This document shows, one piece after another, positions 930 through 61,970 of a stretch of 64,000 bases of DNA (positions are counted from its first letter, which is position 1; every line of letters begins with the position of its first letter). This DNA is from Podarcis melisellensis (lineage: Eukaryota): assembly GCA_964234715.1 (NCBI GenBank), contig OZ174285.1. One strand, given 5' to 3'. A model generated the notes under the pieces. The model saw only the letters and a list, made by a program, of their open reading frames with translations. It did not search any database and was not told the DNA's origin. Position numbers and translations under genes: made by a program.

Positions 930-1870
930 TGACCCCGGGGACTGGCCTTGCAGGAAGTTGGGGAAGGCGGCGGGCGGGGGAAGCAGCGGCAGGCGTGGCC
1001 GAGGGAGAAGCGGGCAGGCCCCGGCGGCAGCGCTTTCCCCTCCCCTTCCTTCCTCCGGTTGCCTCCTCTTTCCCCTTGGTTGTTGATTATTAGTATTTTC
1101 CTAGTTTTCCAAACTAATAAGTGCCACTATCAGGCAGTTGGAAGCTCTCAGAGGCTGCAGANNNNNNNNNNNNNNNNNNNNNNNNNNNNNNNNNNNNNNN
1201 NNNNNNNNNNNNNNNNNNNNNNNNNNNNNNNNNNNNNNNNNNNNNNNNNNNNNNNNNNNNNNNNNNNNNNNNNNNNNNNNNNNNNNNNNNNNNNNNNNNN
1301 NNNNNNNNNNNNNNNNNNNNNNNNNNNNNNNNNNNNNNNNNNNNNNNNNNNNNNNNNNNNNNNNNNNNNNNNNNNNNNNNNNNNNNNNNNNNNNNNNNNN
1401 NNNNNNNNNNNNNNNNNNNNNGGAGAACTGGGCATGTGCTGCAAGGAAACTTGTCTCCGAGCCATTTGCCTGCAGCAACGGGGCTCCTCCATGCAACAGC
1501 GGCTGCCCACGGCAACTGGAGCTCCTGCCAAGCCCTTGCAGAGGGTCAGGAAGGCGGGCGCTGATGGCAGAGGAAATGCGCTGGATGGAGCCAAGGCCGG
1601 GCTCGTCCGTCCGCGGCTCACGGACCCCATTTTCTCCCCATTTACAAAGCAGCAGATCCACAAGTTTGTGATTTATCTCTGTCCGCCAGGCCGGCCAAAG
1701 TCGTGCATTTTCTACCCTGCTCCGGCAGAGGGCGTGCGCACGAGTTACTATCGGGCCACCGCTGGTTGATTTGGGCGAAAGAAGAGCCGCTGGGGTTTAA
1801 AGCTTGAGAGCAAGACCTTGACCCTCGTCCTGGAGGACGGGGAGATGGCGGCTGCCCCGGGGCAGTGGAG
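930..1870. promoter_or_regulatory. CpG-rich island surrounding masked block 1
   Basis: High GC and CpG density compared with the CpG-depleted 3.6-7 kb background; no recognisable protein in any frame. Confidence 0.6.
1162..1421. other. N block, 260 nt (probable masked conserved element)
   Basis: Run of N; unique non-repetitive flanks; length 4 mod 8, like all other blocks. Confidence 0.6.
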
Positions 1871-2724
1871 GCTTGCCTATTAGGGTAGATGGACCACTGC
1901 CCAACCAATTTCCTTGATTCAACCAAGCCCACCTGCTCCCTCTTTTTAAAAAAGAACAGTCCAGAGGGTGGCCATTGGCTGTCTGCTAACTCTTCCTTAG
2001 TTCTCACTTTTGCTTTTGGAGAGAGAGACAGGGACAAAAATAGAATTACAGTAGTTGGCTCTGCCTGTCATTTGCTCTGGCTCCCCCTACTGTTGACCTC
2101 CCTGTCTTCCACTCTAGTGGTTCTGCTGACACTGCCCTGGTGCGAAAGGCATGGGCTGCAACTCCTATCATGCCTGGCTATTGGCCATGTTGGTTGCAGC
2201 AGATGGGAGATGACATCCAACAGCATATTGGGGGCCACCCATGTTTAAAGGTACACATTGCTTCAGTGCTAACAGGGCTGACTCCTGTCACTGAATACAA
2301 ACCAAGCCAAATTATCATTAAAAGAAAGCTGTTTGCTTTCCTCCAGCTTCTTGGAGGAAGGGTAGAATATAAAGAGTAATAAATAAAATATCTGCTTCTC
2401 CCTTCTTGCCATTGCTGAGCTGTCATCATAGTGTAGCATTTATTATGGGGATGTAGATTTCAATCTGTATTGTCTTTGTTATCATAATAAATGCAGAACG
2501 GTCAGCAATGGTAAGTGGAATGATGACTAATAAAGGAAGACTAGTGAACATTGATATGTTTATTACAATTTATATTTTGCCTTTCTTCCAATGAGCTCAA
2601 GGTGGTATTCATGGGTCTCCGCTTTTTATCATCAAATCAATCCTGTGAGGTCGGTTAGCCTGTAGCCCTATGCAGGTCTACTCAGAAGCGAGCCCAATAT
2701 ATGCTCCTAAATAGGCATACAGTA

Positions 2725-2878
2725 CAGTGGTACCTCGGATGTCAGACATAATCCATTCCAGAAAACCGTTCAACTTCCGAAATGTTTGACAACCGAGGCA
2801 CAAAGTCATTGGAAAAAATGGGGGGGGGACACAGAAGCTGTTCGACTTCCGAGATGCTCGAAAATCGAGGTACCACTG
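2725..2878. mobile_element. Tc1/mariner (Tigger-like) MITE
   Basis: TIRs CAGTGGTACCTCG / CGAGGTACCACTG, flanked by TA on both sides (2723-2724, 2879-2880). Confidence 0.85.
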
Positions 2879-3155
2879 TATATTGGACCAGCCTTAGTGA
2901 GATTTTTGGCCGAGTAGGAATTTGGACATAGATGCCGCTGGTCCAGCACAAACTATTATAATACCTCACTGGCTCAGGTCAACTTCTTCCTTACATACTC
3001 CTAGATCACTGGTGTAGTTTTAAGCCTAAAGCTGCAATCCAATGCAGACCCTTGGGAGTAAGTTCCTTTGAACTCGGTGGGACTTATTTCTGAGGAAGCA
3101 TGCTAAGAATCATGATGCATGGGCCCAAGTTATGATTCAAGATATCCCTGCTTTA

Positions 3156-3490
3156 AAAAGGTAAAGGGACCCCTGATCATTAGGTCCAGTCACGGAAGAC
3201 CCTGCGGTTGCGGCGCTCATCTTGCTTTATCAGCCAAGGGAGCCGGCATACAGCTTCCGGGTCATGTGGCCAGCATGACTAAGCCGCTTCTAGTGAACCA
3301 GAGCAGTGCATGGAAACACCGTTTACCTTCCCACCGGAGCGGTACCTATTTATGTATTTCGTGCTTTCAAACTGCTAGGTTGGCAGGAGCAGGGACCGAG
3401 CAACGGGAGCTCACCCTGTTGCGGGGATTCGAACCGCCGACCTTCTGATCGGCAAGCCCTGGGCTCTGTGGTTTAACCCACAGCGCCACC
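3156..3490 (-). mobile_element. Sauria SINE, near full length
   Basis: The reverse complement has the tRNA-like head (ggtggcgctgtgggttaaaccacagag...ggttcgaatcccc) and a ccctttacct tail. Flanking direct repeat CCTGCTTTA (3147-3155, 3489-3497). Homologous to 51146-51493. Confidence 0.9.
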
Positions 3491-6400
3491 TGCTTTACTC
3501 TGCCACAAACCAACTAAGGGGTCTTATGCAAGCTATTCTTTCTTATGCTTAGGCTGTAATCTTAACTTTACTTAACTGAGAGTAAGCCCCATTGAATTGT
3601 ATAGGATTGACCTGTGAGTATACTTCATTAGGACTGCACCATTAGCTGAGCTTATTCCCCAGTGTATGTCTTCAGAATTGCAGACTTGGAGTATCCAAAG
3701 CACTTCACATATACAGTAGATTCCAATTGGATAATACACAATATGCTTTGAATACTCTCAGGCTGTGGTTCTCAAGACATGAGGGATTAAGTGCTCCATT
3801 GAAAACTATTGGACTTAACTTCTAAGTAAACAGACATAGAATTGTGTGGTAAAGCACTATGTGCATCTCAGGCTGGCCCAAAGGACTTTGCAACCTGTAG
3901 TGGAACGACAAATTGCTCCCTTTCTCCCCAAGGTATCTAGTACCCAACGCCAGACAAGTATTTTCAAAAGCTGAGAGAAAATTCCACAGATGCCCAGCAC
4001 TAGCAATAAAAATGCAGTAATAATAATTAACCACCCCTTCATGACACCCAAAATCAACTGTCTGAGATGGCCACCTCACTTTGCCAAGTGGTAAAGCTTG
4101 CTGCTTGCCCTATAGATAAATTCTAAGTAGCACCAGTGGTGGTGTTAGTCTCTAGCTGTAAGTCTGCCAAGGACAATGGCTCCTCGTCCATCTTAACAAC
4201 CTTTACCAAGATGAGCTGCTTAGAATATCTGCAATGTAGATGTGAATTATGTTCTTCGGGGGGGGGTTAAGGTCTACCCTGTCTGTTATTCCTTTGCCGT
4301 ATTCTAATTACCCCTTTAGAAGTATTTACAAATATGGAATGGTTTATAAATGTGTGTGTCATTTGTGTGTAGGAGTCACTTTAATCTTCTGTGTATCACT
4401 CCAATTTTAGTGTGATGCCAAAACAAGCACCTCTTTTGGGATTATTTCTTAAGTGTTTGCTCTGCACACCACACATTTGTGTGCACACTCCTGCTTGCTC
4501 TGCATCCAGTGTGTTCCTGCCACTGGTTTTTGAATTGTTGTACACACAGCTTTAGCCACAGTCCATATCTATCCCGTCCTTTCTTAGGAAATGTTGTTTT
4601 GATATGTGTTTCTACAACTGAGAAAAAGAACAAGCTAGCAGATTTTTAATATGGCAATGTGTACACGGCCATCATCTCAGTACTAAGGTATGCCAGTGTT
4701 ATTAATAACCTATTTACATAAAGTTTCCTGAAGCAAGGAATAGTGGTCAACATAATACCTGATCCACCAGGCATTTAAACATTGATACAACCAGTGTCTC
4801 TATTAACAACCTCCTATTTTTTCTTGCCTGGGACTTCAAAAACAAGGAGAACATGTGACTGGATCACATATTGTGTAAGCCTGGCCTAAAGTCACCCAGT
4901 ATATTCATGGCAGATCTGATATTTGAAATGGGAATTTCCAGATCAGAGCTCTTGATCTTAATCACCATAATCTCTCTCATATTTGTCCTCAAAGTTATAA
5001 TACTGTGAATACTGTTGTTTCTGTATGACCAGGTCTAAGAGCATCCCTCTTATTTGCTAAACTAAACTTGTACTATGCTGCTAAAAGTGATATTTCAAAT
5101 GTACTTGAAGTATTGGAAATCTTTTAACTTTATAAATTCTTTATAAAATTTATAAAGTTATAAATAACTTTGATTTATGGTCACCAATCTAAGCAATACC
5201 CGTTATTATTCATCATTTCATGTATATAGTAATTTTGGCATACATACTTTGACACAATTTTGTTGATATATCCAGAAACGTTTATCTCATTGTTTATAGT
5301 TGATTTTAAATTTTATGTAATTGTTGCATGTCATAAAGTCTAATGTAAACAAAGCTAGATCTCAATGCAACCATGTTAAATAGTTTTTATTAATTTTCAT
5401 TTAAAAACTATGTTTAAAAAAATAGAGTGCCATGGGTCATGCCAGTAGAGTGTATAACTCTTAGAGGAAACAAATCAGGGAGTGTAGTGTAGGATTGTCA
5501 CTGGATGGTAGAAATAGGGTGAGAAATAGAATTTGGTTTGGGACAGTAAGCAAAGTGATGCTAGGTTGGTCAATGAAACCATTCCTAGAATCATAGATTT
5601 TAGAGGGAGGCCTACTCTCTCACTACAGTATAGGACCCCAACCTAAGGCCTGCCAAGGGATGTGACCTTACTCTCCTCATTTAGGCTCTGTTACATTTTT
5701 CTGCACTTATTATTATATAGCCCTATAGTGTACATAGTGCTTTACAAAGACAACAATCACCATTTTCATGAGCTGGGAACAGAAGGTAGATATTGGCAGC
5801 CTTTGCCAAACTGGGGTCCTCCAAATCTTTTGGACCATAACTCCCATCAGCCCCAGCTCAGCACCCATACTATGTTAACTGTAAATTAACTTTGCCCTAA
5901 TAGAGCAGCCCTCTAGCCCACATTACATTAAAATAAGACTTCAGTTACTCATATATAACAGGTACCCCAGTTAACTTTTGTGAATTAATCACCTGAATTA
6001 CCATGCAACCAAGGGGTAAAAACAATGTGTATGCAAAACCTTCTGAAGCCCTTTTTACCAGACATCAAACAGCTACTATTCTAATTTTCTGATTTGTTTT
6101 TTAAAAACAAGAACCATAAACACGCTGGTCATTTTGGAACAATAGCTAAAAATCACAGAGCCATTACTGTCCATTAAAATCCTGTTTACAGTTCAATGGA
6201 GGTTCATATGGATTGCCCATCCTTCATAGAGGGAAGGAAGGGGTGGGTGGGAAGAGATTTATAATCTTCTAAGGGTCTCTAAACCCTTTCCAGTCTTTGA
6301 CAGCCTTAAGGCTGGGTGCACAAATTGTGGGAAAGGGAGGAGGGAAATCATATTTAATTGTGGGAATGGGGATTAAATAAGTAGCTGTTGGATGCCCTGA

Positions 6401-7419
6401 TTTCTATTTGATCAATAAATCATCAAGTGTCTTAAGTGCTGTATTCACTATTAAATTAAATGAAAAATACTTTAACCTGCCTCCCTTGTGTCAGCAGATA
6501 AAGCTAATAATATTTTTCGGTTATATTTCAATTTAGGTATTTAAGTGCATCAAACACCATGGGACATTTTTTTTCCTTGGAATAAATAGAAAATGGCCTT
6601 CAAGTTTAAATGTGGAAAAAATATTTTCTAGTGAAGAGAGCTGTTTAAATAGAGTATGTACATGGGTTAATATATTTAAATGGTACATTAACAGGCAGGC
6701 AACCCAACGTGTTTACACTTAAAAGGAAATTTCAGAGGGAGGTGATGCTGCTGAGCTTTGTATGGCACAAGCAGCGCTTTTCAGTTAGGAGTCTCAGCGC
6801 TCAGAGCTACACTTTAAGTAACCTTTTCTCTAAATGTTTACCCTTTCCTTTTGTTTTCACCTCTAAATTAAGTTTACTTTTAACTCTTTCTTCTCAAGCG
6901 TTCCATTCCTCCAGGCTTCTCTTATCCTGACAGACCAAGGGCGAGTAAATCTATCTAAGTGTCATCTCTCAGGGGCTTACACTACAAATACTATTCTCTT
7001 TCTCCCCCCGCCTTTTTCAGATGATCAATATCCCTGCCCCCCAGCACGAGGAAAAAACTCGCGCGCGTATCTTCTAACGTGTATACGCATTAGCACTTAG
7101 GGACGCACATCTGGGTCATGTGGTCACTTTATCTATTTTTCATAGGACTTTTCCTACATTGCAGGAGGGTGTGTACTTGCGTGTGAAAAAAAATATTAGA
7201 TGAGGCTTTCAATTCTTAGGGGGATCCGGTCAAACTCACCGGCATTTTTATAAGCGTATACTCGGTAGGAGGCCAAACAAATAAACATAAAAATGAGTTT
7301 CAACATGTTTTGGGGCCTCACAGATCCCAGGGAGGAAAGCGAGAGCCGAATCGTTTTAGAGTGATGTCAACTTTCCCCTAATTTTAATGCCGATCTGCTT
7401 TTATATGTAAGAGATCTCG

Positions 7420-8170
7420 CTCGCCTTCTTTCCCCTCTAGCGGTAATAACCTGACGCTGCCCTAAAATCGCGATCGAATGATATCGGTGAGGTTTAATTG
7501 CCAACTTAGCATCTCCGTCACACCTCCCAGCCCATTAGACGCTGCAGCCTCACCTGGTTCTACGGGCGAGCTCAGCGGCCTCGACGGCCAGAGCCTGATT
7601 ATACAGCCAAGCTGCTAATTTAGCGAACCGCCCTTTCGAGGGAGGCCTTGATGGACGCCACACGCCGGAATCAGGCGCGCGCTCCGAGGAGGGGCCGGCG
7701 TGGCGCCGCTGCTCCCCGCCCGCCCGCCGCCGCCTCCCTGCAGAATGAGAAGCGGGGAATTAGCCGAGGTGTGGGCAGGCAGGGAGCCGAGCAATTAGCG
7801 CCGAGCGGCCGCCGGGGGGACAGCAGGGGAGGCGCCCGGGCCGCACTCTGCTGCAAAGGGCAAGGCGGCGGCCGGCCAGGCTCTGCGCCAGAACGGCAGC
7901 CGCGGCGCCTGGCCTCCCGGACCCTCTGCCCTCTGTCGGGAGGGCGGCGTAAAGCCGAGGCCGAGCAAGACTAGCAGCAGCAGCAGCAAGCCGGCGGGTG
8001 ACGTGTTTCCCACCCCGGCAAGACTCTAAAATAGCAGGCGCGGGGAAACCCTGAGAGGCAGAGGCCTTTAACCCTTCGCTCCCAGGGCGCTGGAAGAAAA
8101 GGCTTTCATCTGGGAGAGCGGGAGCTTCCCCTGCCCCCCCCCAGCAAATATCTGGCGCAGGGTGGCGAGA
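7420..8170. promoter_or_regulatory. CpG island without an evident coding exon
   Basis: Very GC/CpG-rich, with several TAAT/ATTA cores; ORFs are low-complexity Arg/Gly/Ala/Pro. Confidence 0.7.
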
Positions 8171-8289
8171 GGGAAAGGTTAAAGCCCCACCCTCCCTTTC
8201 AAGGGTTCTGACCCGGGTGAGGGGGATCCCTGCGACTTTCTTCTTTAACCTTTAAGAAGCCGTCAGCAGACATGGCAGCTGCTAGTTTG

Positions 8290-8365
8290 TCATAGAATCA
8301 TAGCATTGTAGAATAGGAAGGGACCCAGAGGGTCATCTAGTCCAACCCCCTGCAATGATGGAATC
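8290..8365 (-). mobile_element. CR1 LINE 3' end fragment
   Basis: catagaatcatag...gggtcatctagtccaaccccctgcaatg is the reverse complement of the CR1 tail seen at 57560-57621. Confidence 0.8.
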
Positions 8366-9075
8366 TCTTCCCCCCCCCCCGCCCCTTGACCCACACCACC
8401 TAGAGTTGAGTATAGAACGAGATATCCGAATCCCAGACACACCAGCAGTTCTTTGGGGCAGATTAATGTATATGATGTCTATAATCTACGAACTGCACAC
8501 TTACACCCCCCCACACACACATGACATGTAACTGTGATGATATGTGTGGGAATGTTTGTTATATTCTGATAAATATTGAATGTGCAAAGACCCCACAGAT
8601 GGTCATCCATGTATTATGGTGTCCCTAATATGCAATGTACAAGTGTGTGTTCTGAATCTGTACAGAATCTTATAGTGCACACATGCAGTAAACGAATATA
8701 CAGTGCTTAATTCAGGCATTTTTGCATTCCAGGCCACTTTATGTCTCTCATGAAGCAGACTATAGACCACAAGAGCTCAGGCCCCAATCAATCTTCCAAG
8801 TGTCACAATAATTTTGCTAGCTTTTGCTGCAACAAGCCAATGTGGCTAATCTTCGGCAGTATGTGTGATGGGTGCCTATTATCATGCAATAACTACTGTA
8901 TGTGCAAAATTTGATGTGTGTACAACAGAGAAATGCATACTTCATGCATGCATGATACTGGCATGCAGTCTATGCATGGGTGTATCTATAAACACATGTA
9001 TTACATGTGGTCAATATGCATATTATATATATGCATTATGTACTATGTATAAAATAGAGAGCACACTATATAATA

Positions 9076-9076
<1 letters not shown>

Positions 9077-9105
<29 letters not shown>
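9077..9105. repeat. (TTGA)n tetranucleotide repeat
   Basis: Direct reading. Confidence 0.9.
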
Positions 9106-9106: not shown

Positions 9107-9879
9107 CCTGCCTATGAACTCAGAACAGGACTTCTTATCCCACCAGCACTGGGAAGTCCAAGATCAATAGGGAAGATGGTGATTTGCCCAATGCAATATG
9201 CACATTTGAGGGCTGTGAGGGATTAGTATCCTGGATGTGAATCCACATTCCATCCACTAAGGCTACTCTGGCATTGTGTATGTGCATTTATATGAGCCAT
9301 TAATATAACAGATGTTCATATTACATACATATATAACAGTTTGCATAATTCCATTTTGGTGTGTCCATGTGTGTAGCATCAGCATCTGTATCACGCAAAT
9401 AACCCCAGCCTGTGCATGTAATGCGTTTAGTCGAACAGATGTTGATATGCAACTTGCCCGCTTATTCCAGGTGGGTAATCAAGGAGCCCTCTCCAATGTA
9501 CCAGCAAACCCTTTATGCAAGTGGCTCTCCTTGTATGTCTGTTGCAGATAAAGATACATTAATGGGCCAGGCACCCATTATTATTGTATAGGCAGGCACA
9601 AATAATGGGGAATGTGCACACATGACCATAGAGCATTGTTAATGATGTACACCAGCGATCTAAGATATACTTCATATCCATTTCAGTTTGTAGATAATTT
9701 TGCTACGTTACCCTCCCGTTTTTGTTTGTGGTGTGTGTGTGTGTGTGTGTTCGTTCTCCGGGTGCCTCACTCTTCCTTCCGGACTGTAATCACAAGGGTA
9801 AATATTGGTCGGGAGGCAATATAGGTTTATGGCCCAAATGTGTGTGTAAACGCTTGAATCTAGGACTAACCTATATTTA

Positions 9880-10662: not shown

Positions 10663-10666
<4 letters not shown>

Positions 10667-10731
<65 letters not shown>
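10667..10731. repeat. (CT)n microsatellite
   Basis: Direct reading; explains the ERER/SLSL ORFs in the track. Confidence 0.95.
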
Positions 10732-10737
<6 letters not shown>

Positions 10738-14211: not shown

Positions 14212-14383
14212 NNNNNNNNNNNNNNNNNNNNNNNNNNNNNNNNNNNNNNNNNNNNNNNNNNNNNNNNNNNNNNNNNNNNNNNNNNNNNNNNNNNNNNNNN
14301 NNNNNNNNNNNNNNNNNNNNNNNNNNNNNNNNNNNNNNNNNNNNNNNNNNNNNNNNNNNNNNNNNNNNNNNNNNNNNNNNNNN
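14212..14383. other. N block, 172 nt (probable masked conserved element)
   Basis: Run of N; TAAT-rich unique flanks. Confidence 0.6.
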
Positions 14384-14976: not shown

Positions 14977-15188
14977 NNNNNNNNNNNNNNNNNNNNNNNN
15001 NNNNNNNNNNNNNNNNNNNNNNNNNNNNNNNNNNNNNNNNNNNNNNNNNNNNNNNNNNNNNNNNNNNNNNNNNNNNNNNNNNNNNNNNNNNNNNNNNNNN
15101 NNNNNNNNNNNNNNNNNNNNNNNNNNNNNNNNNNNNNNNNNNNNNNNNNNNNNNNNNNNNNNNNNNNNNNNNNNNNNNNNNNNNNNNN
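14977..15188. other. N block, 212 nt (probable masked conserved element)
   Basis: Run of N within CpG-containing unique sequence. Confidence 0.6.
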
Positions 15189-16924
15189 TTATAATCCGCC
15201 AACGAGGCCACAGGCAGTTAAAAATGGTGCGTGTGTGGATGTGAGAATGGCGGTGAGGAAGAAAAATAACGTCTCTGGCCAGGGAGCTGACCTTCTCCTG
15301 AGAGGGCAACTCAGGGGTATACAGAGATAAATGCAAGTTATATATAATAGTACAAGCACACACATTGTATACATATATACAGAGTGCCATATATTGCATT
15401 ATTGTATTATGAGCCTTACACATTTTGTTTTCGCATTTAAGGAATTTTCTGCAAAATGGGCCAATAATAATAAACTACTCTCTGACCATTGACTAAGGAA
15501 GTGCATATATTATGTATATCATGTACATAATATATGTATTGCATATAATTATATATAGTTATGTCAGTACTGAATAGATCATATTGGCACTAACAAACTG
15601 GCCATAATTCAGAGCACAGTGTGATGCACTGAAATTCCATTAATATCAGTGGGTTTAAGAAACTGAATAGTGGCCACTGTGAAGAATATACATTGCTAAT
15701 ATATACAATTATTGGACACATAATTCCATATATACTCATACCTTACAGTATATGTGAAAGTCTGTTTTGATATAACAGGCTGGGTGAGCAATTCACATGT
15801 GTTTGTGCAAAGGTTAATCACACTCTTACATAAGATTACATCTTTATATACATATACATATTTTCTGGATGAATCCCTGAATGTAAACAGGTTATCCTCT
15901 GTTTAAAATTGGAATTTTGACTGGCTACAAGGCCTGCATCCTGCAAGACTAGATTGTCTGGAAGTGCGTTAATCCAGATTGGTTGCCAAAAATATTTTAT
16001 TCCGGTCGATTGGATGGCCTTAAAACAACATGGGAACACAACCAATGGCGTTGGGCTGCATTCCCTTAACGAGAGACTCGCCGAAGGTTGAGCCTGACAC
16101 ACATCACAAAACCTTTTCTGATCGATATCATATCACCCCGTTAGAAGGGGGTGGTTTTGGTTTAAATGTAGGGCTTGCTTGCCACGACAAATTTCCCCCT
16201 AAAAGCCTGTGTCTAGAACTGTAACCTTAGGGCTAAGGCGAACAAGAAATGGGAAACAATGGCAGATAAAGACGCTCATGGGCATCCAAAGACCCTGATC
16301 TTTAAGGCTGGCATTCAGCTCCCGTGGGAATCTTCCTCCCCCAAAAGTTTGAAGCCTTCACCCTAAGATCGGATTGGCGAGAAACAGTCACGTGGACAGG
16401 GTGGGCTAAAGGGTGGCGATGGAATTCGAATTGAGCAGGCAGTTGAGGGGAAGCGCCTTTTAGTTTCCCGGGGCCAGGCGGGGGGAAAGGGCGCTTAGGG
16501 TGTCAGCACAATTCCGTTCACACAAGTCACGCTTCTTGTTCTCGCCATTCACCCGGAAGTGTAAATGAAATAAATCCCGAGGTGGTTTTTTTTATTGCCC
16601 GCCACCTCCTCCCCGTCAGGAAAGTCGAGCATGTTTGTATTATGATTTCTCGCTGCCTCTCTCTCTGGGCTAAGAATGATAGCGCGAGGAAGGAGCCATG
16701 ACTGGAAATGTTGCCCTTCCTCTTCTGTCAGCTACCAGGGCAGCTCGCGGCGGCTGCTGCTGCTTGCTTTCCCTCCTCCTCCTTCCCACTGCAGCTGGTG
16801 GGGTGGTTGTTTTGTTTTTTTAAAATATATTTTTTTTATGACAGATGTCAGCCACCTCAGGCAGCGGGAGCGAGAGGAGGAAGGAAATTCCCCACAAAAT
16901 AGCAATGGTTTCGAAAAAAAAGGA

Positions 16925-17352
16925 NNNNNNNNNNNNNNNNNNNNNNNNNNNNNNNNNNNNNNNNNNNNNNNNNNNNNNNNNNNNNNNNNNNNNNNNNNNN
17001 NNNNNNNNNNNNNNNNNNNNNNNNNNNNNNNNNNNNNNNNNNNNNNNNNNNNNNNNNNNNNNNNNNNNNNNNNNNNNNNNNNNNNNNNNNNNNNNNNNNN
17101 NNNNNNNNNNNNNNNNNNNNNNNNNNNNNNNNNNNNNNNNNNNNNNNNNNNNNNNNNNNNNNNNNNNNNNNNNNNNNNNNNNNNNNNNNNNNNNNNNNNN
17201 NNNNNNNNNNNNNNNNNNNNNNNNNNNNNNNNNNNNNNNNNNNNNNNNNNNNNNNNNNNNNNNNNNNNNNNNNNNNNNNNNNNNNNNNNNNNNNNNNNNN
17301 NNNNNNNNNNNNNNNNNNNNNNNNNNNNNNNNNNNNNNNNNNNNNNNNNNNN
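16925..17352. other. N block, 428 nt (largest; probable masked conserved element inside the promoter island)
   Basis: Run of N ending about 160 nt upstream of the NRF1 site. Confidence 0.6.
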
Positions 17353-17559
17353 TCCCTGAGGAGCTCGCGCTGAATGCCTGAGCGGGCAGCGCGCCAACTT
17401 CTCCACAAGGAGGAGAGAGAGAGAGAGAAGAAAAAAAAGAGAAAGAGTGAAAGGGTGGGTGGGGGAGGGGAACAGGAAGAGCTGCGGCCGCGCGCGCCAA
17501 ACAACGGGAAATTCTGCGCATGCGCACGCGCTTCAGCCTCTTCTAGGCGTGATTGCAAA

Positions 17560-17672
17560 GCGCTGGAGTCGTAGCGCCCGCGCGCTTTGTGCCGAGGGGG
17601 ACGGGCGATGGCTGAGAGCTGCTGCTTTTTTAGTATCCCGCGGTTCGTTTTCTGTCACATATGCCTACGCAG
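17560..17672 (+). ncRNA. Putative first exon of a spliced lncRNA/5'UTR (start approximate)
   Basis: Lies downstream of the NRF1 site and ends at CAG|GTGCGC; contains a strong-Kozak ATG at 17608. Confidence 0.45.
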
Positions 17673-20600
17673 GTGCGCGTGAGAAAAGAGCCCGGTCCTC
17701 CTCTCGGAAGATGCTGAGAGGCTGAGCAGGCTCGTGCACGCGTGATTTTCTTAAGCGAAATGGCCAAATGCCTTTCTCCTTTTAGCGGGCGCGTTTGTGT
17801 GATCTATGGCTCTGTCAGTTTGAAACAGTTAAAAGAGAAGCCAAAGCCTGGGCTTTTAAGATGCCGGCCCAGCAACCCCATTCATCATTGCGTCGCGGCG
17901 TTTTTTAACGTCCCCGCGCTCGGCTGGGGTTAACGTCTTAACAACTCCTTTGACGCAAGGCAGAGTCTGGATCCAGCCTAAGGGGTGGGTGCTCAACAGA
18001 AGAGACCCTGTGGAAAAGAAGAATCGGGAAGCCCGCGTGAGAAAGGGGGGTTCCCCCCAGAAAAAACAGCATAAGAAAATAAATATTCTCTACGTAGGTT
18101 AGGAGGGAGAAAAGTGAGTTTATTATAATTGGATTTATAATTATTGCCTTAGGCCAAGGTTCAAATCCCAAGTTTAGAGGTGCTTGAAGGAGATTGAGTT
18201 ATACATCACTTTGGGATTCACTTTATACACACACAGTATATAAATAATGATTTGCCCTGGTTTTAGTTATTCCCACATATTTTATTCTTTTTATTTCCCT
18301 ACTTCTTAAAAAGTACCTCATTCCTAAATAAGGAAATGGAAGGCTAATGCTAATACAGCCAATTGCAGGTAGGGGTTTGTGCAGCCCAGTTAAAGGTTTC
18401 CACTCATCAGTTGAAGAAGTGGTTTAGGAAACTGGTTTTCTAGATGAAACTGAGTAAAATGAAGGAAGGGTCAGGAGGTCAGTTTTCAAACCTATGAAGG
18501 AATGTAATGAGCTCCCAACTGTGTTTCTTGGTCTAACGGGGCAGGTTGTCGCCAGGTGTGAGTTTAATAGTGGCCTTAGATAAGCCACTCCTTAACATTT
18601 GAACAGTGACTTCTTGAGACAAGAATTGGAAGTACGTTGGAAGCCTTTGTGTGCTGTACGTGTTTATGTGTTGGAGTTCACATACTGTTTACTCCTATTG
18701 GATGAACTATCAAGGGCAGGGCAGAGTGAGGCTTACCTGTGCCTTCTAAGCTAGCCTGCTGCACTCAGGTATCATGGAGGGTGTTGTCCCATTGTCAGTG
18801 TTGAAGTCATACTAAACTGCCAGTCTAGGTGGCTTTTGTACATGATATACAGAGAGTTACTATCTGCTTCAGGTAGCCCAATGTTTTGGGCTGGCCCTTG
18901 TCAAGGGAAGCAGTGGTTCAGTTGGTATGGGGGGGGGGGGAGAAACCATGTACAATTCAGACCTGGGGTGGCCAACCTGGTGGCTCCCAGTTGTGAATCA
19001 GCCCTGGCCATCATAGCAAATGGTCAAGAATGAGGGGAATTCTAGTTTACATATTCTGGATGCTGGGAATCCCTATTCTAGACTAGAGATTCTGTGTAGT
19101 GAGGGATGGTGAGTTGATGTAAAGAACAGATAAAAAGCATTGTGAGCAGCTAAAAGAAAAACTTCTCTCTGGACCTAAACACAGGATAGTTGTGTGTGTT
19201 CTTTGTGGGAAGGTGGACTTAAAAGTGCTATTAACCAAGAATGTGAAGGTTGGGGGTGGTGAGTTTTTCATATTATTCAGCACACATTCATATTTAAATA
19301 GCTTGTTAAACGTTTGGTTGCAGTTTTCAAGTACATGTAATATTTAACTTTTCATGCAGGAAATACATACTCTTGAAACAGTTTAATTATTAGGTTTAAA
19401 CTCAAGTTGCAAATCACATACTGTACTCCAGAGTTGTTTTATTTGAATGAATGGACTTACTTTGGTGATAGAGACTTAAGGAGTCTGAGCCCAGTTTTAC
19501 CACTAATATCTTCTCTTACGATTTGTAGCTAGGCATTAAAAGAAAGCAAGTCTATATTTGTGGCACTTAAAAAAAATATATATATTGAATTCTGAATCCA
19601 CAAATCGCCCCCCTGTCCAGATGGAACAAAGAAGTCTTCAAAAGTTGCAAATCCTGACCTGGCAATATTATATAACATTCCGCTAGAGAGTTTTATATAC
19701 TTCATTTTATGTCCCCTGGGTAACTTTACTGGGTTAGCACTTTCCCTATTGCCATGGAGCTGCATAATATGTGAAGATGTACTGCACTCTAAATGCTTAA
19801 GTGCTCTGTCTTACAGTGCTTTCCTGGTAAAGGTCAACATAAATTCATCTTCCATTGATGCAGCATTTGTTTTTGGCTTCTAAAGCACGCTGTGTTAGGG
19901 ATGGAAAAGAATTTCCATTAAAATGTAAACAGTGAATGGACAGGTATATGGAGCTACTGCTGAGCATTTGGCAGTGTTCTCTTTTTTGTACGTGTGATTG
20001 GGTGGTTTGGGGAGCTCTTAAGTTGAGATATGCTTCTAATAAGTGTTCTTTGGCCTCTTTTTTTCATTACCAATATGGCTTGATCTCATACTACTTCCAG
20101 AAGATACTGTTGTGCACACCTGTGGCTTCAGAGCTGCAAATATGAAAAAGGTAGCAAGCACACCTGTTTCCAGCAGAAAATGAGTGCTTGGTGGAAAATC
20201 CTGATTCAAACACCAGGGATTGTTTGTGCCTGCATTCTTTTTGAAATAGACATGCATGCTTACCCTTCCCAAATTATTCCTTCATGCATTATAATACAAA
20301 ATCATTGTAGAAAGTGTACAGCCAAAGGCTACACTATTAGGTGTACTTAGAAAGGGGAACAATCTCATTTGATTGCAGTGCAATCCTAAACATGTATAAT
20401 AGGAAGTTAATTCTCCATTTAACTCTTTGAGACTTATGGAGCAAGCCTGTGTATGCCTACACAAAAGTTATACCCCACTGATACAGTAGGAGTTATTCCC
20501 AAGTGTGAGTGTGTAGGATTGTGGCCTTACTTCCAAACAAGCATATATAGGATCATACTGTAAGGACAGTTTAATAGTGCCAGAGATCATCACTTCTTTT

Positions 20601-20904
20601 TCATAAAGGTCAGCTTAGAGTGCCCCTAAGTTCTTGATTAGCTGGGTCACAGAGCCTGCAATGGCCAAGTTCAGGATGGTAACAAAACTAATGTTGCCTT
20701 AATTTATTTATTTAATATGCTTCTATCTTGCCTTTCTATTAATCAAATTTTTAGGACTGCTTCATATATTAGTTATAATGTGCACTTGCTACAGAACTGT
20801 ATTGAGTACTTGCTAAAATTGTAACATGAAGCTCAAATAGCCTTTTTGTTGTTGCTTGTGTATGTCATTCAGACTTGTTAGAGACTTTGGGCTCACCAGG
20901 GCTT

Positions 20905-20948
20905 TGTTGTTTAGTCCTGTCCGACTCTTGCACATATACCTGCTGGTA
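20905..20948 (-). mobile_element. Tiny RTE/BovB-type 3' tail insertion carrying a captured local segment
   Basis: The minus strand reads aagagtcggacaggactaaacaacaa, matching the RTE tail at 52633-52670; direct repeats ACCAGGGCTT at 20895-20904 and 20949-20958. Confidence 0.65.
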
Positions 20949-21689
20949 ACCAGGGCTTACCTCAGTGTATTTCTGCATTGTACATGAGATGGGGTGTGGT
21001 ATGCTTGTGGGAAAGCTGTGTGTATTTCACTGTATTAGCAGGTATACAGCATAGCTTTGTAATGCATAACTCTTAGCATTGTCACATAGTTGGGACAATA
21101 CTGGCCAGGATCCAAACAACTGTGAAACTAGTTCCATGAACCCAAGGAGGCTTTAGATTTGTTTCTCTTGAACATTAGCCTCACACCATGCTGCACAGCA
21201 AATCTCTTTTGAAACTGTAGGGAGTTTAAGAGGGGAATAAAGGACTCCACTGTGCTGTCTGAGCTTAAGTAGTTCTTTAGATCTCAGCTTCTCAAACCAT
21301 AGATGTAGGAGCCTATGGAGAGGGCAAGATAGCTCTATGGTAGTAAATGTATAAAACAAATATAATAAACTTATTAATTGGCAAATAGGTGATCTTTCAT
21401 AGTACATCAGAAAACCACCACCTGAGGTGTGTGCCTCACTCTGCCAAATTGTAGGATTAGTCCCTGAGACTCTAGGTGATCAGAAACGCTAAGCACAGAG
21501 GGAAAGACATAACTTGCTGAAATGGAGTACAGAAAATGCCTGAAAGGTGGACCAAATCTAATATTTTGGGGGCTGTCTGTATTTACAGGTAATCCGATAG
21601 TTTGGTGGGGAAAACAATTATTATAAAAAACATTTCTAGGCAATTGCCTTTCTAGACAACTGATCTTAACCCCCATCTTCATGAGACTG

Positions 21690-22120
21690 CTGTTCAATAT
21701 CTTTGTAAAAACTGCTAAGTCAAGTCATCAGATGATCTGTAGTGTGGCGTCAAGCATATGTGAATGACACAGAACTTCCTGCTTTTCCTATTTCATCTAA
21801 TTCTGGTCAGGTGGTGAAAATGCTGAACCAATGACTGGGATTGGTAATTAAGTGTATAAGAAAAGGTGGAGGTTATGTTGGTGGTCAGTTTGGTTGTGTG
21901 GGCTGGTGGTATTCAAACCTATTCTGGATAGGGTTGCATTTCTAAAGAATGACATCTGTGGTTTGGGGATACTCCTAGATCCAACTCTCTCTTTAGAAGC
22001 ACAAGTAGCCTTTCAGCAGTTTTCCAAAGTGTTGCAAGTTGCTGTAAAGTACAGCAAGAATATAGCTGCAAGATTGCTAACTAGGATCAGGTAGTGGGAA
22101 ACCACCTTGTTGGTGCTTAA
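21690..22120 (+). mobile_element. Degenerate L2-clade LINE RT fragment
   Basis: Translations LGILLDPTLSLEAQVA and NIAARLLTRI resemble the L2 ORF2 C-terminal region. Confidence 0.6.
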
Positions 22121-22999
22121 GCTAGGAATGGGGACCCTGTGTTGAATAATAAGCAGCTAGGGGAGAAGGAGGAGAGGATAGAGGTTGAAAAAAGAGCTGT
22201 AAGTGGTGGAGAGCCCTATTCCTATCCTCTGGTCCCTCTGGAAAGCTCAATAAAGCTGCTGTACCTGGAACTGGTTGGAGACATTGCAGCTGAATGGGAC
22301 ACAGCTGTGGGCACCCACCTTGGGTCTGCCCATAAAAAGCAAGTCTCAAGTGAGAGACTAGGATGATGCCTGCTGTTTCCAGGAACTATTCTCATTATGA
22401 GACTTTTCTGGGTGAGCTGAGAGTTTGTTTGGACCTTGGGTGAGAACCTGGAGGAGGCTGAGAGGGAGAGTGTGTCAAAAGGAAAATGAATTGATACTGA
22501 TTTATATATTTGTAGCTTTGTATTCTTGTATGTAAGTGCATATTTTTGTAATATTTTGTTTAAGTTGTCTGTTGCTTCAGTATTTTGTACACTGTGTAGA
22601 GATATTTTTAGTATATTAAGTGGTATAGAAATAATCAAAATAAATACTCAAATTACAATTGTCCATACTAGTTGGGAGTTGGAGTCCAACAACATCTGGC
22701 AAGTCACAGGTTTACCATCCCTGTTTTAAGCAGTTAATGTTGGCTCACTTCTAGCCCTGATTCAAAGTACTGGTGTTTGATTGTAAAGCCATTGAGAACT
22801 GGGTACCTGTTATAGGATCATTCTATAGCTACTGTACTTGCAAATGATCACTGTGCTTACTTTGTGTACATTTAAGCTGTAATTGAATGGTCACCAACTA
22901 CACTTTTGCATGTCATTGACACTTGACCCCACTGTTTACATTTTTTAACCCCCCTATAATATATATATATATACACACACACACATACCAACTGAGGAT

Positions 23000-23105
23000 A
23001 GCATTTCGTGCATCTGAAGAAGTGGGATCTAGTTTATGAAAGCTTATGCTGTAATAAATATGTTAGCCTTTACAGTGTCACAGGGCTTTTTGTTGTTTCT
23101 GTTGC
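23000..23105 (+). mobile_element. Penelope-like element terminal fragment
   Basis: gcatctgaagaagtggg...gaaagcttatgct..aataaa..gttag..cttta..gtgtcaca resembles reptile Penelope termini. Confidence 0.6.
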
Positions 23106-23498
23106 TTGCTTAGAGTAAGTTCTTATGTTTTAAGAGATGGAGAACAAGCCATTGTTATGCTTCTTGTTACCAGCAGGTATGGTATATGTGCAAATATACC
23201 AGCATAGCCTCATTTGAAGACAATGATTAGATGTAGATTTCATGGCTTAAAAATCAAAGTTTTTTCTTCCCACTGTGCATTATTGTTTTTCTTACAGAGA
23301 TTGCAGTAGAGTATTGCACACTATTCTGTAATATTTTGGTAAGCCTGATAAAGGTATTGTTCTAATATGGATTTTGAATGCTCCCTACTATACTACTGCT
23401 TTATGAGTGCTTTTGTAGAGACTACATTGTAATCTTCTAGAATATGCTTTTAAAAAGCCACAAAGTTAAAAACATGCCTCCTTTGTTTTTCTCTTTAG

Positions 23499-23594
23499 GT
23501 CAATTTTGTATACTCTGCCAGCTCCAGTGATGAAGAACTAGGATAGATATCAGCTAATTGCAAGGCTGTACTTCCATCCGTTACAAAGGAACAG
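23499..23594 (+). ncRNA. Putative internal exon (96 nt) of the + strand transcript
   Basis: Long pyrimidine tract cctcctttgtttttctctttAG before it and donor CAG|GTATGT after it; stops in all three frames. Confidence 0.65.
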
Positions 23595-32616: not shown

Positions 32617-32948
32617 NNNNNNNNNNNNNNNNNNNNNNNNNNNNNNNNNNNNNNNNNNNNNNNNNNNNNNNNNNNNNNNNNNNNNNNNNNNNNNNNNNNN
32701 NNNNNNNNNNNNNNNNNNNNNNNNNNNNNNNNNNNNNNNNNNNNNNNNNNNNNNNNNNNNNNNNNNNNNNNNNNNNNNNNNNNNNNNNNNNNNNNNNNNN
32801 NNNNNNNNNNNNNNNNNNNNNNNNNNNNNNNNNNNNNNNNNNNNNNNNNNNNNNNNNNNNNNNNNNNNNNNNNNNNNNNNNNNNNNNNNNNNNNNNNNNN
32901 NNNNNNNNNNNNNNNNNNNNNNNNNNNNNNNNNNNNNNNNNNNNNNNN
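32617..32948. other. N block, 332 nt (probable masked conserved element)
   Basis: Run of N; unique flanks. Confidence 0.6.

Positions 32949-33030: not shown

Positions 33031-33090
<60 letters not shown>
33031..33090. repeat. Compound (TG)n(AG)n microsatellite
   Basis: Direct reading. Confidence 0.95.
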
Positions 33091-37775: not shown

Positions 37776-37907
37776 NNNNNNNNNNNNNNNNNNNNNNNNN
37801 NNNNNNNNNNNNNNNNNNNNNNNNNNNNNNNNNNNNNNNNNNNNNNNNNNNNNNNNNNNNNNNNNNNNNNNNNNNNNNNNNNNNNNNNNNNNNNNNNNNN
37901 NNNNNNN
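37776..37907. other. N block, 132 nt (shortest; probable masked conserved element)
   Basis: Run of N. Confidence 0.6.
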
Positions 37908-38464: not shown

Positions 38465-38724
38465 NNNNNNNNNNNNNNNNNNNNNNNNNNNNNNNNNNNN
38501 NNNNNNNNNNNNNNNNNNNNNNNNNNNNNNNNNNNNNNNNNNNNNNNNNNNNNNNNNNNNNNNNNNNNNNNNNNNNNNNNNNNNNNNNNNNNNNNNNNNN
38601 NNNNNNNNNNNNNNNNNNNNNNNNNNNNNNNNNNNNNNNNNNNNNNNNNNNNNNNNNNNNNNNNNNNNNNNNNNNNNNNNNNNNNNNNNNNNNNNNNNNN
38701 NNNNNNNNNNNNNNNNNNNNNNNN
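38465..38724. other. N block, 260 nt (probable masked conserved element)
   Basis: Run of N; unique motif-rich flanks. Confidence 0.6.
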
Positions 38725-40448: not shown

Positions 40449-40498
<50 letters not shown>

Positions 40499-51145: not shown

Positions 51146-51493
51146 GCGACGCGGGTGGTGCTGTGGGTTAAACCACAGAGCCTAGGACTTGCTGATCAGT
51201 AGGTCAGCGGTTCAAATCCCTGCGACGGGGTGAGCTCCCATTGCTCGGTCCCTGCTCCTGCCAACCTAGCAGTTCGAAAGGACGTCAAAGTGCAAGTAGA
51301 TAAATAGGTACCGCTCTGGCGGGAAGGTAAATAGCGTTTCCGTGCACTGCTCTGGTTCGCCAGAAGCGTCTTAGTCATGCTGGCACATGAGCTGTACGCC
51401 GGCTCCCTCAGCCAATAAAGTGAAATGAGAGCCGCAAACCCAGAGTCAGCCATGACTGGACCTAATGGTCAGGGGCCCCTTTACCTTTACCTT
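51146..51493 (+). mobile_element. Sauria SINE, full length
   Basis: Head gacgcgggtggtgctgtgggttaaaccacagagcctagg; tail (ccttta)n; 13-bp TSD TACCCCCAGTGTA (51133-51145, 51494-51506). Confidence 0.92.
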
Positions 51494-58233: not shown

Positions 58234-58359
58234 CAGGGGTTCATAACTGCGTCCGTCCAGATGTTGTTGGACTACACCTCCCATCATCCCTGACTATGCT
58301 GGGGCTGCTGGGAGTTGTGGTACAGAAACATCTGGAGGGCTGCAGTTTTTGTACCCCTG
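58234..58359. mobile_element. Palindromic hAT MITE
   Basis: TIRs caggggt / acccctg; perfect 8-bp TSD TGCTAAGC. Confidence 0.85.
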
Positions 58360-59117: not shown

Positions 59118-59607
59118 TTAAAAAGATATTTATTGAAATTTCAAAGGTTATACAAAAAAAGTAATAAAAACAAAACACAACCACAAAAAATGACAAATAT
59201 AAAAAACAAAATACAAAACTAAAAACTATTTAAAAACAAGTAAAGTTTCATTCCCTTATTTTCTTATAACTTACTTCCCCGACCTCCTCATACCTCCCCT
59301 TTTTGTATTCCAATTTCTAATTATTAATTCAGCAAATCCTCTCCCTTAATTTTCATTTAATTTTCAACCTTTCTTTTCTTTTTACTTAATCATTACAGCT
59401 GAAAAAAACCCTTAATTTTCTAAACCAACATCATTCTAACATTCATTAATTTTGCAATATTTCCCAAGATAGTCCTTAAATTTCTTCCAATCTTCTTCCG
59501 CCGTCTCTCTTCCCTGGTCTCGGATTCTGCTAGTCATTTCTGCCAGTCCCATATAGTCTATCACCTTCATCTGCCATTCTTCCAAGGTGGGTAGATCTTG
59601 TGTCTTC
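59118..59607 (-). mobile_element. L1-clade LINE, 5'-truncated, with 18-bp TSD
   Basis: The minus strand reads WKTQDLPTLEEWQMKVIDYMGLAEMTSRIR (L1 ORF2 C-terminus style), followed by a 3'UTR and AATAAA; TSD CAGTTAAATGCTGCTTTT (59100-59117, 59608-59625). Confidence 0.88.
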
Positions 59608-61718
59608 CAGTTAAATGCTGCTTTTGCTGTATTTCAATGGTTTTAAATTTGCTTTGTAAGCTATCTTCAGTTCAGTCCTGTTTTTGAAACAGGTATGATA
59701 TTAATGTAGTCTGGTCACATCTTACGTGCATTTAACTTGTACAATTTAAATTACGTAGCTAGTTGAAATCAAAAGGTGAGGGTGTGTGACCTAACTAAGT
59801 CTGGCAGGACAGTTTACTCTCTGGTCTTAATCCCTTCATGCATTAATTAGAGTTACCAGTAAATATGTTGGTTATATGAGGCGGGAAATATTCCACAGAA
59901 ATTGGCCAGGTTAGTTTGAGCTTTGAGCAGAAAAATTATAAGTTATTTAAATTGGCTCCAGTGAGTAGTCTGGAAGTACCTGCTGTTGTAGTATTCCTTA
60001 TTTTAAGCAGAATGGACCTAATCAGTTTGTTTGATGTGAGAGCTCTATGTAAGAGTATTTTGTATGTTTCATGCATGCATTTTGGGCACAGCTTCTCTTC
60101 ACCAGATGAAACAAATGTAATATACTCAGTAGTAAGCCACACTGCAATTTCTTAAGTTCTTTAAAGATGGGTGCAAAATTTATATTTAGATCTGTTCATT
60201 TAAATGCATTCGGGGCGGGGGGAACCTGCATGGAATTTTGTGGATAGTGTTTAGTTCAAAGTCGGTTGTGTTATTGGCTACTGAAACTCGCTGAGAAGAA
60301 GTAGTTACCAGATGGTGAAATGAAAACCACTTTTTCCTGTTCACCTGATGGCCTAAAACTGGAAGCAGTCAACTCAATTATAATGATGGGACACATACTT
60401 TGCAATGAAGTTGTTATTCCTTTCTCATTCATGGGTGTCTGTGTTTAATGAACCTGACAATCATGACAAAATTGACAAATGAGTGTTGTGGATGGGGCAG
60501 GGGGATTCAGGTGGCAGAGGAGGTGGTGGTAAGGTGAGGCTCAAATTGTTGGAGAAAGTATGTGCTGAAAAATAGGTCTTACAGTTGTGTGTAAAGGAGG
60601 AGGCAAATTGTGTGATTGCAAGTTGTGTAGACTTGCATGTGGAAAAAGAAAAAAGAGTGCTGTTTCTAACCCACAAAAAAGGAAAAAGTAATCCAAATCA
60701 CCCTTGTTAATGCCAGGGTAGTAGTCAACCTGAAATTGGTAGATTCTTGGAACTGTACATAATCTGCATGCCCTATTTAGCTGCAGAGCGCATTGTTCAG
60801 TAGTAAAGAATCCTGATTGCTCCAAATAAGTCTCATATTGAAGACGCTTCCTTTCTTTCTTGGTGGGTTTCATCATTTGCGGATGTTATTTCTGCAGTAC
60901 GACTTGCCAGAGGACTTATTTATTATATTACAATTATTTATATCCCACTTTAAAAATGAATCAAGGATACACAAAGCAGCTTACAAATCTTAAAGGTATT
61001 TACAACAATGAATAAAACACACAAATGCGAAGTCACAATGAAACAAAAAGCAGATGGTATAAAAGCTAGCAGCTTAATGAAAGTGAAGCAATAGTATTTT
61101 GCTTTAATTCAGCAAGCTCAGCTTACAGATCTTGCCTTAATTGCTGGTAGCGTCGTTCAGAAAATATCAGATAAACTAAATTGAGGATTAGAATGCATCA
61201 TAGATTAAAGTCTAGAGCTCAGATTTAAGTACCAGCTGGAAGGGAGAACAGCCTTAAAATTGGTGCCTCCCACGCAAAGTACAAGAGCTGGCAGATGTGA
61301 TTAAAGTGCATTAATATACAAACTATTTGAATTTGGGTTTATTAGTTTGTATAGTTTCTGTAGTTTACAGCTTCTAGTTTATTGCCCCGTTGAACAAAGG
61401 CAGAAAAGCATGGCAGTTTTATGTGGCATTGTTTAAGTATTCATAAAACAGAAGTAGCCGGCTTTCTCACAAGGGGCTGTTTCCGCCCTGCAGTAGAGAA
61501 AGATACTATTTTTCCCAAAATAAATGAGGAAAATCAATTATTCCCACTTTCCTTGAATCCGCCCACCACATACCCCACATCTCTCATATATACGCTTTAC
61601 TTACATGATTTAGTTCCAGCTTGTAGTGGTTGTCCTAATATGTAATTGTTTGATTGACATAAGGTATGTAACAATAGATAGCTGTGAAATACATTAAGCG
61701 TTTAGGAGTATGTTGTGC

Positions 61719-61970
61719 NNNNNNNNNNNNNNNNNNNNNNNNNNNNNNNNNNNNNNNNNNNNNNNNNNNNNNNNNNNNNNNNNNNNNNNNNNNNNNNNNN
61801 NNNNNNNNNNNNNNNNNNNNNNNNNNNNNNNNNNNNNNNNNNNNNNNNNNNNNNNNNNNNNNNNNNNNNNNNNNNNNNNNNNNNNNNNNNNNNNNNNNNN
61901 NNNNNNNNNNNNNNNNNNNNNNNNNNNNNNNNNNNNNNNNNNNNNNNNNNNNNNNNNNNNNNNNNNNNNN
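61719..61970. other. N block, 252 nt (probable masked conserved element)
   Basis: Run of N; unique TAAT-rich flanks. Confidence 0.6.

What the first reader, a model, noticed from the sequence alone, without database searches (positions are those of the whole stretch)
1162..61970. Eight N blocks share a length rule (132+8n) and probably mark an array of ultraconserved elements
Seen: the lengths are 260, 172, 212, 428, 332, 132, 260 and 252, all 4 mod 8. The chance of this is about (1/8)^7 if lengths were arbitrary. Every block sits in unique, motif-rich sequence rather than at a repeat edge, where assembly gaps usually fall. Inference: a stepped k-mer mask (for example 32-mer hits at step 8, padded 50 nt each side) hid segments identical to a reference such as human. 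If so, the window holds eight deeply conserved elements in 61 kb with no visible coding exon. Established: such density is typical of genomic regulatory blocks around developmental transcription factor genes.
Basis: partly seen in the sequence, partly recalled or inferred. Interest (0 to 1): 0.75.

Follow-up and report, generated by a model that had tools for sequence, protein, structure and literature searches.

The report
Deliberate masks over human-like lizard DNA
The eight runs of N are almost certainly deliberate masks laid over short stretches of lizard DNA that match human DNA, so the length rule comes from the masking program, and what lies beneath is probably an ordinary cluster of deeply conserved elements.

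Summary
There are eight N runs of 260, 172, 212, 428, 332, 132, 260 and 252 letters, all 4 mod 8 (chance of one shared residue 8^-7).

The rule points to a mask, not to assembly gaps and not to biology. The starts share no mod-8 grid, so the 8-step lies inside each block or on the reference side. A 71-nt (TC)n stayed unmasked, so simple words are exempt. Contigs of the same species that the index holds were withheld around the blocks when laid, which fits a human-match filter but is not proof.

A 132-letter block needs only one shared word.

The setting is CpG-island-rich non-coding lizard DNA with no detectable coding exon. RNA contigs of two related species show a spliced non-coding + strand transcript: exon 1 ends at 18113 and exon 2 is 23499-23594. 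Block 4 sits at its 5' end.

The blocks are most likely conserved non-coding elements. Hidden exons or small RNA genes remain possible.

First readers noted the same kind of N runs on other pieces of this genome. This is ordinary, so interest is low.

The parts
1162..1421 (.). N block 1, 260 letters (132+8*16); flanks GC-rich (0.58) and CpG-dense
14212..14383 (.). N block 2, 172 letters (132+8*5); AT-rich flanks with TAAT-type motifs
14977..15188 (.). N block 3, 212 letters (132+8*10); inside a CpG-island-like segment (14601-15200), with a GA/GAGC tract just to the left
16925..17352 (.). N block 4, 428 letters (132+8*37), the longest; lies between two RNA-covered stretches and just upstream of the CpG-island promoter
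32617..32948 (.). N block 5, 332 letters (132+8*25); (TG)n(GA)n microsatellite 80-140 nt to the right
37776..37907 (.). N block 6, 132 letters, the minimum size; one shared word would suffice under the mask model
38465..38724 (.). N block 7, 260 letters; 557 nt from block 6
61719..61970 (.). N block 8, 252 letters (132+8*15)
17201..18000 (.). CpG-island-like promoter segment (GC 0.54-0.61, CpG o/e 0.98-1.11) with an NRF1-type palindrome at 17516-17525
17639..18113 (+). Visible, RNA-supported part of exon 1 of a spliced non-coding transcript; GT donor at 18114; stops in all frames
18114..23498 (+). Intron 1 (GT...AG), shown by RNA contigs of two related species that jump from about 18113 to 23499; GC skew +0.12
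23499..23594 (+). Exon 2 (96 nt), with a polypyrimidine-AG acceptor and a GTATGT donor; stops in all three frames
16420..16734 (.). Stretch left of block 4 that is also present in the RNA contigs of both related species (strand unknown); ETS-type site at 16553
7401..8200 (.). Unmasked orphan CpG island (GC up to 0.72, CpG o/e about 1) in the CpG-island-rich left third of the window
10666..10736 (.). (TC)35 microsatellite, 71 nt, left unmasked; serves as a control showing that low-complexity words are exempt from the mask

Best explanation
The eight N runs are not unread DNA. They are deliberate masks, very probably length-preserving, laid by the scan's own human-likeness screen over stretches that share exact words with human DNA. 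Each mask appears to be the union of fixed-length word hits spaced in steps of 8, with the step inside each block or on the reference side, plus fixed padding. That gives lengths of 132+8n. Because all eight blocks keep the 8-phase from first hit to last, none has a net insertion or deletion against the reference (inferred). What is hidden is most likely a cluster of deeply conserved, mostly non-coding elements. Blocks 1-4 would be promoter-proximal or CpG-island-associated elements. Blocks 5-8 would be enhancer-type elements inside the transcription unit of a spliced non-coding + strand RNA that starts at the CpG island next to block 4. This is the usual picture of a regulatory landscape of a developmental gene, and that gene was not identified. 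Shown here: the length rule, the absence of a common grid, the exemption of simple repeats, the withheld contigs, the CpG-rich setting, the spliced non-coding transcript and the lack of detectable coding sequence. Inferred: that the reference is human, the word and pad sizes, and the non-coding nature of the hidden parts.
For:: all eight lengths are 4 mod 8 (P about 5e-7) and the starts are on no common mod-8 grid; (TC)35 and (ATA)15 are unmasked, so this is a filtered word mask and not a blanket one; run X4 (same species, another sample) holds 0.80 of the sampled words of 13100-19000, yet its laid contigs appear almost only outside 14085-18615. The tool states that contigs matching human DNA are left out; no interspersed repeat lies at any block edge; blocks 1-4 lie in or next to CpG-island-like DNA, and the flanks are CpG-richer than random placements (P = 0.002); no Pfam family and no homologue for any open frame abutting a block or 120 aa or longer in the window. 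RNA contigs of two related species give a GT-AG intron at 18114-23498 and non-coding exons. GC skew is +0.044 to the right of 17.5 kb against about 0 to the left (P = 0.02), as expected for + strand transcription across blocks 5-8. (PMC3531063): ultraconserved non-coding elements occur as clusters near developmental regulator genes, about half of them intergenic and the rest in introns and UTRs; unchecked scan notes report similar N runs in other windows of this genome, at loci they name FOXP2, ZNF521 and ARX.
Against: No laid contig bridges a block, so continuity and true length are not shown directly. The tool itself warns that a hole in depth proves nothing. An unchecked follow-up note elsewhere in this genome (s1-508139) concluded that N runs hid coding exons. 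The 557 nt between blocks 6 and 7 are open in one minus-strand frame (local P = 0.003). TAAT-type motifs are not enriched at the flanks. No target gene was found.
Confidence: 0.65

Rival explanations
1. Some or all of the masks hide exons of one or more highly conserved genes, either coding or UTR. For example, blocks 5-8 could be downstream exons of the + strand transcript whose two non-coding 5' exons are visible. Blocks 6 and 7 could instead be parts of one large minus-strand exon.
For:: a spliced + strand transcript starts at 17.6-18.1 kb and runs towards blocks 5-8, and its first two exons could be 5' UTR; the strand skew is consistent with transcription across blocks 5-8; the whole interval between blocks 6 and 7 is open in one minus frame (P = 0.003 locally); unchecked note s1-508139 concluded that N runs hid coding exons elsewhere in this genome. 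The 50-nt pads would hide the splice sites of short exons.
Against: No open frame leaving any block has a Pfam match. The 185-aa frame has non-coding-like composition (G-poor first codon position, few D/E/V/A, many C/H/N) and no homologue among proteins of 188-597 aa. An open frame of that length occurs in 10% of simulated windows. Exact 32-letter identity between lizard and human is uncommon in ordinary coding exons because of synonymous change (general knowledge). Blocks 1-4 lie upstream of the transcript start.
Confidence: 0.2
2. Some of the shorter masks hide small, near-invariant RNA genes. Examples would be a microRNA pair 0.7 kb apart (blocks 6 and 7) plus a third one 23 kb on (block 8), all hosted by the non-coding transcript, or snRNA- or 7SK-type genes.
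For: The visible transcript is a spliced non-coding RNA of the kind that hosts microRNA clusters. Under the mask model the spans of 32-160 nt fit hairpin-sized conserved cores. The 328-nt span of block 4 happens to equal the largest span a roughly 331-nt RNA could give (arithmetic; RNA sizes from memory).
Against: Nothing visible supports it. Rfam finds no partial match at any block edge. No Pol III promoter is seen at the right distance from block 4. Blocks 4 and 5 are too long for microRNAs. The spacing argument rests on memory only.
Confidence: 0.1
3. The N runs are true assembly gaps with estimated lengths.
For: The scan's program labels six of them as assembly gaps. No laid contig bridges a block.
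Against: Eight estimated or conventional gap lengths would not all be 4 mod 8 (P about 5e-7). The flanks are unique sequence, not repeat edges. The missing contigs are explained by the human-match filter, because the index holds 0.80-0.92 of the words of the stretch. Unchecked scan notes report similar runs at known conserved-element loci in the same genome.
Confidence: 0.03

Closest known systems
Clusters of ultraconserved non-coding elements (UCNE clusters, genomic regulatory blocks; UCNEbase PMC3531063; Sandelin et al. 2004 PMC544600)
   Same: Several human-matching stretches lie close together (8 in 61 kb) in unique DNA with no detectable coding sequence and many CpG islands. The sizes inferred from the mask (32-328 nt) overlap the UCNE range.
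   Different: Identity, length and non-coding status of the hidden parts were not measured. No target developmental gene and no synteny were established.
Transcribed ultraconserved regions and conserved-element-bearing lncRNA loci (from memory)
   Same: Block 4 lies between two stretches present in RNA contigs of two related lizards, at the 5' end of a spliced non-coding transcript.
   Different: Transcription of the block itself is not shown. The left RNA-covered stretch may belong to a divergent transcript.
Assembly gaps (runs of N of conventional or estimated length)
   Same: They are written as N in the sequence.
   Different: The lengths follow an arithmetic rule, the flanks are unique sequence, and same-species contigs exist for the region but are withheld.
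Hard-masking by a k-mer screen against a reference
   Same: Quantised lengths, a fixed minimum size (132), merging of nearby hits and exemption of low-complexity words.
   Different: The actual parameters and reference are not documented to me. The 8-step is not on the query's coordinate grid.

Membership tests
Assembly gap | Length set by convention (one fixed value) or estimated individually, with no arithmetic rule across gaps | tested here: not met
   there are seven different lengths among the eight runs, all 4 mod 8 (P about 5e-7).
Assembly gap | Independent contigs of the same species end at the gap edges, typically at repeats | tested here: inconclusive
   no contig bridges a block, but contigs are missing for kilobases around the blocks, not only at the edges. 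The index holds 0.80 of the words, so a filter explains the hole; no repeats at the edges.
Deliberate mask of human-like words | Quantised block lengths with a fixed minimum | tested here: met
   lengths are 132+8n, with the minimum of 132 observed.
Deliberate mask of human-like words | The hidden letters match human DNA | not testable with these tools
   Reading the letters is barred by the operators. Indirect support: same-species contigs around the blocks are left out by the tool's human-match filter.
Ultraconserved element (200 bp or more, 100% identical in human, mouse and rat) | Length of at least 200 bp and perfect identity among the three mammals | not testable with these tools
   The letters are hidden. 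Under k=32 and pad=50 the hit spans are 160, 72, 112, 328, 232, 32, 160 and 152 nt (arithmetic).
UCNE (UCNEbase: more than 200 bp, at least 95% human-chicken identity, non-coding) | Length, identity and non-coding status | not testable with these tools
   Definition from PMC3531063. The hidden letters were not read. The visible flanks show no coding signal.
Genomic regulatory block | An array of conserved non-coding elements clustered in a restricted region | tested here: inconclusive
   Eight masked stretches lie in 61 kb. That they are conserved non-coding elements is inferred, not shown.
Genomic regulatory block | Conserved synteny with a developmental regulator (target) gene | not tested
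Transcribed ultraconserved region (block 4) | The conserved stretch itself is present in RNA | tested here: inconclusive
   RNA contigs of two species cover 16420-16734 and 17639-18115 on either side of block 4. Contigs over the block itself would be filtered out.

The most novel reading that the evidence does not exclude
Block 4, a stretch whose human-matching words span some 330 nt without net indel, may be part of the first exon of a lizard non-coding RNA driven by a CpG-island promoter. It would then be a transcribed element kept nearly unchanged since the lizard-mammal split, whose constraint acts on the RNA or on promoter-proximal DNA and not on a distal enhancer.
Probability: 0.15. Interest if true: 0.35.

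Novelty: already known. Interest (0 to 1): 0.1.

Why it matters
The main value is for housekeeping. They are neither gaps nor biology. Their number and length give only a rough lower bound on deep conservation. The biology underneath, a cluster of deeply conserved elements in CpG-island-rich non-coding DNA next to a spliced non-coding RNA, is a well-described kind of vertebrate genome organisation. One small useful by-product is that keeping the 8-phase implies no net indel inside any of the eight hidden elements.

Tried and rejected
1. Stepping on the query's own coordinates: rejected, because the block starts fall on six different residues mod 8.
2. 'Any shared 32-mer is masked': rejected, because (TC)35 and (ATA)15 are unmasked.
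3. The tiny runs X17-X20 as UCE-capture libraries, whose contigs would centre on the blocks: rejected. Their contigs carry a GT-AG splice junction (18113 to 23499) and are RNA.
4. Coding exon between blocks 6 and 7 (185 open codons, local P = 0.003): no Pfam family, no homologue, non-coding-like composition, and not unusual window-wide.
5. Pfam scan of all other open frames of 120 aa or more and of frames leaving blocks 1, 3 and 4: nothing.
6. Rfam at permissive threshold, looking for partial lncRNA or miRNA families at the block edges: nothing.
7. TAAT/homeodomain motif enrichment at the flanks: absent.
8. RNA raw reads of organism F (X23): 0 reads laid, so no test.
9. Locus identification through the scan's notes: no note names a neighbouring gene.
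10. The microRNA-cluster and 7SK ideas for blocks 4 and 6-8: they cannot be tested without the hidden letters and are kept only as a low-odds rival.
12. No letters at N positions were reported by any tool or used, and none were looked up.
Full report
OBSERVATION. Their lengths are 260, 172, 212, 428, 332, 132, 260 and 252. All are 4 mod 8, that is 132+8n with n = 16, 5, 10, 37, 25, 0, 16 and 15. For arbitrary lengths the chance of one shared residue is 8^-7, about 5e-7, so the rule is real. The N total is exactly 2048, which I cannot explain and record only in passing. The rest of the window is 41% GC with CpG o/e 0.30, which is typical vertebrate DNA. Scan notes call the genome a wall lizard, and Rfam finds hairpins of the mir-5408 family.

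WHAT THE RULE SAYS ABOUT THE MASK.
- The block starts fall on residues 1, 3, 0, 4, 0, 7, 0 and 6 mod 8. A screen that stepped along this genome in eights would put all starts on one grid, so that model is rejected. The 8-step must be inside each block. The simplest case is reference words sampled every 8 letters and looked up at every query position, with hits merged and padded.
- A perfect 71-nt (TC)n at 10666-10736 and a 46-nt (ATA)n at 40449-40494 are unmasked. Such words surely occur in any vertebrate reference (general knowledge), so low-complexity or high-frequency words are exempt.
- In this model, a block that keeps the phase from first hit to last has no net indel against the reference. 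All eight keep it.
- Lengths reported in notes on other windows (302, 189, unchecked) break the rule. In this model they would be merges of hits in different phases.

GAPS OR MASKS; CONTINUITY. The scan's program asked that continuity be tested first.
- I searched runs with 13100-19000 and laid four of them on that stretch.
- X4, the same species from another sample and study, holds 0.80 of the sampled words of the stretch. Its laid contigs nevertheless appear almost only outside 14085-18615. The interior, including 1.7 kb of unique unmasked DNA between blocks 3 and 4, is nearly empty.
- The tool states that contigs matching human DNA are left out without notice.
No contig bridges a block, so continuity and exact hidden length are not shown directly.
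- No letters at N positions were reported, and I looked none up.
- True gaps remain very unlikely because of the length rule and because no interspersed repeat of the window touches a block edge.

SURROUNDINGS.
- The left 18 kb is rich in CpG-island-like segments: 801-2000, 7401-8200, 9801-10600, 14601-15200 and 16201-18000.
- The flanks of the blocks (300 nt either side) are richer in GC and CpG than random placements (P = 0.0075 and 0.002), driven by blocks 1-4. TAAT/ATTA motifs are not enriched (P = 0.75), so "motif-rich" is a property of the whole window, not of the flanks.
- Four blocks have a GA/CT tract within 200 nt (P about 0.04).

CODING POTENTIAL. No open frame that leaves a block, and no frame of 120 aa or more anywhere in the window, matches a Pfam family. 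One oddity is that the whole 557 nt between blocks 6 and 7 are open in one minus-strand frame. Locally this has P = 0.003, but several points speak against a gene:
- 10% of simulated windows contain an equally long open frame.
- The composition is non-coding-like.
- A word search found no relative among proteins of 188-597 aa.
I take it for chance.

A TRANSCRIPT.
- Two small runs of related species (X17, X18) are RNA. Their contigs cover 17639-18115 and then continue with 124 letters that do not fit there.
- The first 30 of those letters match the window at 23499 onward.
- This defines a + strand intron at 18114-23498 with a GT donor and a polypyrimidine-AG acceptor. Exon 2 is 23499-23594 (96 nt) and is followed by a GTATGT donor.
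- The visible part of exon 1 and the whole of exon 2 have stops in all frames. They are therefore the 5' exons of a non-coding RNA or a 5' UTR.
- An NRF1-type palindrome lies at 17516 and an ETS-type site at 16553.
- The same RNA runs also cover 16420-16734, to the left of block 4. Block 4 therefore lies between two RNA-covered stretches, either inside a long first exon or between divergent transcripts.
- GC skew is about 0 to the left of 17.5 kb and +0.044 to the right (35 of 46 1-kb bins positive, P = 0.02), and +0.12 in intron 1. That is expected if + strand transcription runs across blocks 5-8.
- I examined the exons separately and did not join them.
- The RNA raw-read run X23 laid no reads and is no test.

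WHAT IS HIDDEN.
- It cannot be read here.
- The main reading is conserved non-coding elements. This rests on the clustering, the unique CpG-island-rich non-coding setting, the lack of coding signal, the rarity of exact long word matches in ordinary coding exons at lizard-human distance (general knowledge), and the known habit of such elements to cluster, about half intergenic and the rest in introns and UTRs (PMC3531063; PMC544600).
- "Ultraconserved" in the strict sense is not implied. A 132 block needs one shared word. Under k=32 and pad=50 the spans are 160, 72, 112, 328, 232, 32, 160 and 152 nt, so only blocks 4 and 5 can reach 200 nt.
- Two rivals stay open. One is hidden exons: an unchecked follow-up elsewhere in this genome concluded this (s1-508139), and the + strand transcript could continue into blocks 5-8. 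The other is small RNA genes hosted by the non-coding transcript.

VERDICT. The mask reading is supported and refined. It would be a known kind of genome organisation in any case. The length rule belongs to the scan's data preparation, not to the lizard. First readers noted the same pattern on other pieces of this genome.

Noticed in passing
window 1-64000: The eight N runs sum to exactly 2048 letters (2^11). This may be coincidence or may reflect a property of the masking or window-selection program.
   Followed up: no
window 4328-4431 (-): U6 snRNA match just above Rfam's gathering score (45.6 against 44 bits). It is unmasked, so it shares no long word with the reference and is probably a diverged copy or pseudogene.
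   Followed up: no
window 30395-30478, 58260-58332, 45396-45479: Palindromic hairpins matching the mir-5408 family on both strands, well below the gathering score (28-45 against 90 bits). They look like copies of a small inverted-repeat transposon; the family is known from Anolis (from memory).
   Followed up: no
window 3157-3493 and 51151-51488: A pair of about 330-nt interspersed repeat copies in opposite orientation, 83-90% alike and SINE-sized. A second pair lies at 8290-8373 and 44090-44173.
   Followed up: no
window 37909-38463 (-): The whole 185-codon interval between blocks 6 and 7 is open in one frame (local P = 0.003). It has no Pfam family, no homologue and non-coding-like composition, so it is taken for chance.
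   Followed up: yes
window 14883-14891, 17413-17427, 33060-33090, 38781-38862: GA/CT low-complexity tracts lie within 200 nt of four of the eight blocks (P about 0.04 against random placement).
   Followed up: partly
window 17500-64000: Sustained positive GC skew on the + strand to the right of the promoter (+0.044; +0.12 in intron 1) against none to the left. This is consistent with a long + strand transcription unit.
   Followed up: partly
window 18736-18783: Many unrelated contigs of the same-species run match only this 35-50-nt stretch, so it is a short, highly repeated sequence in the genome.
   Followed up: no
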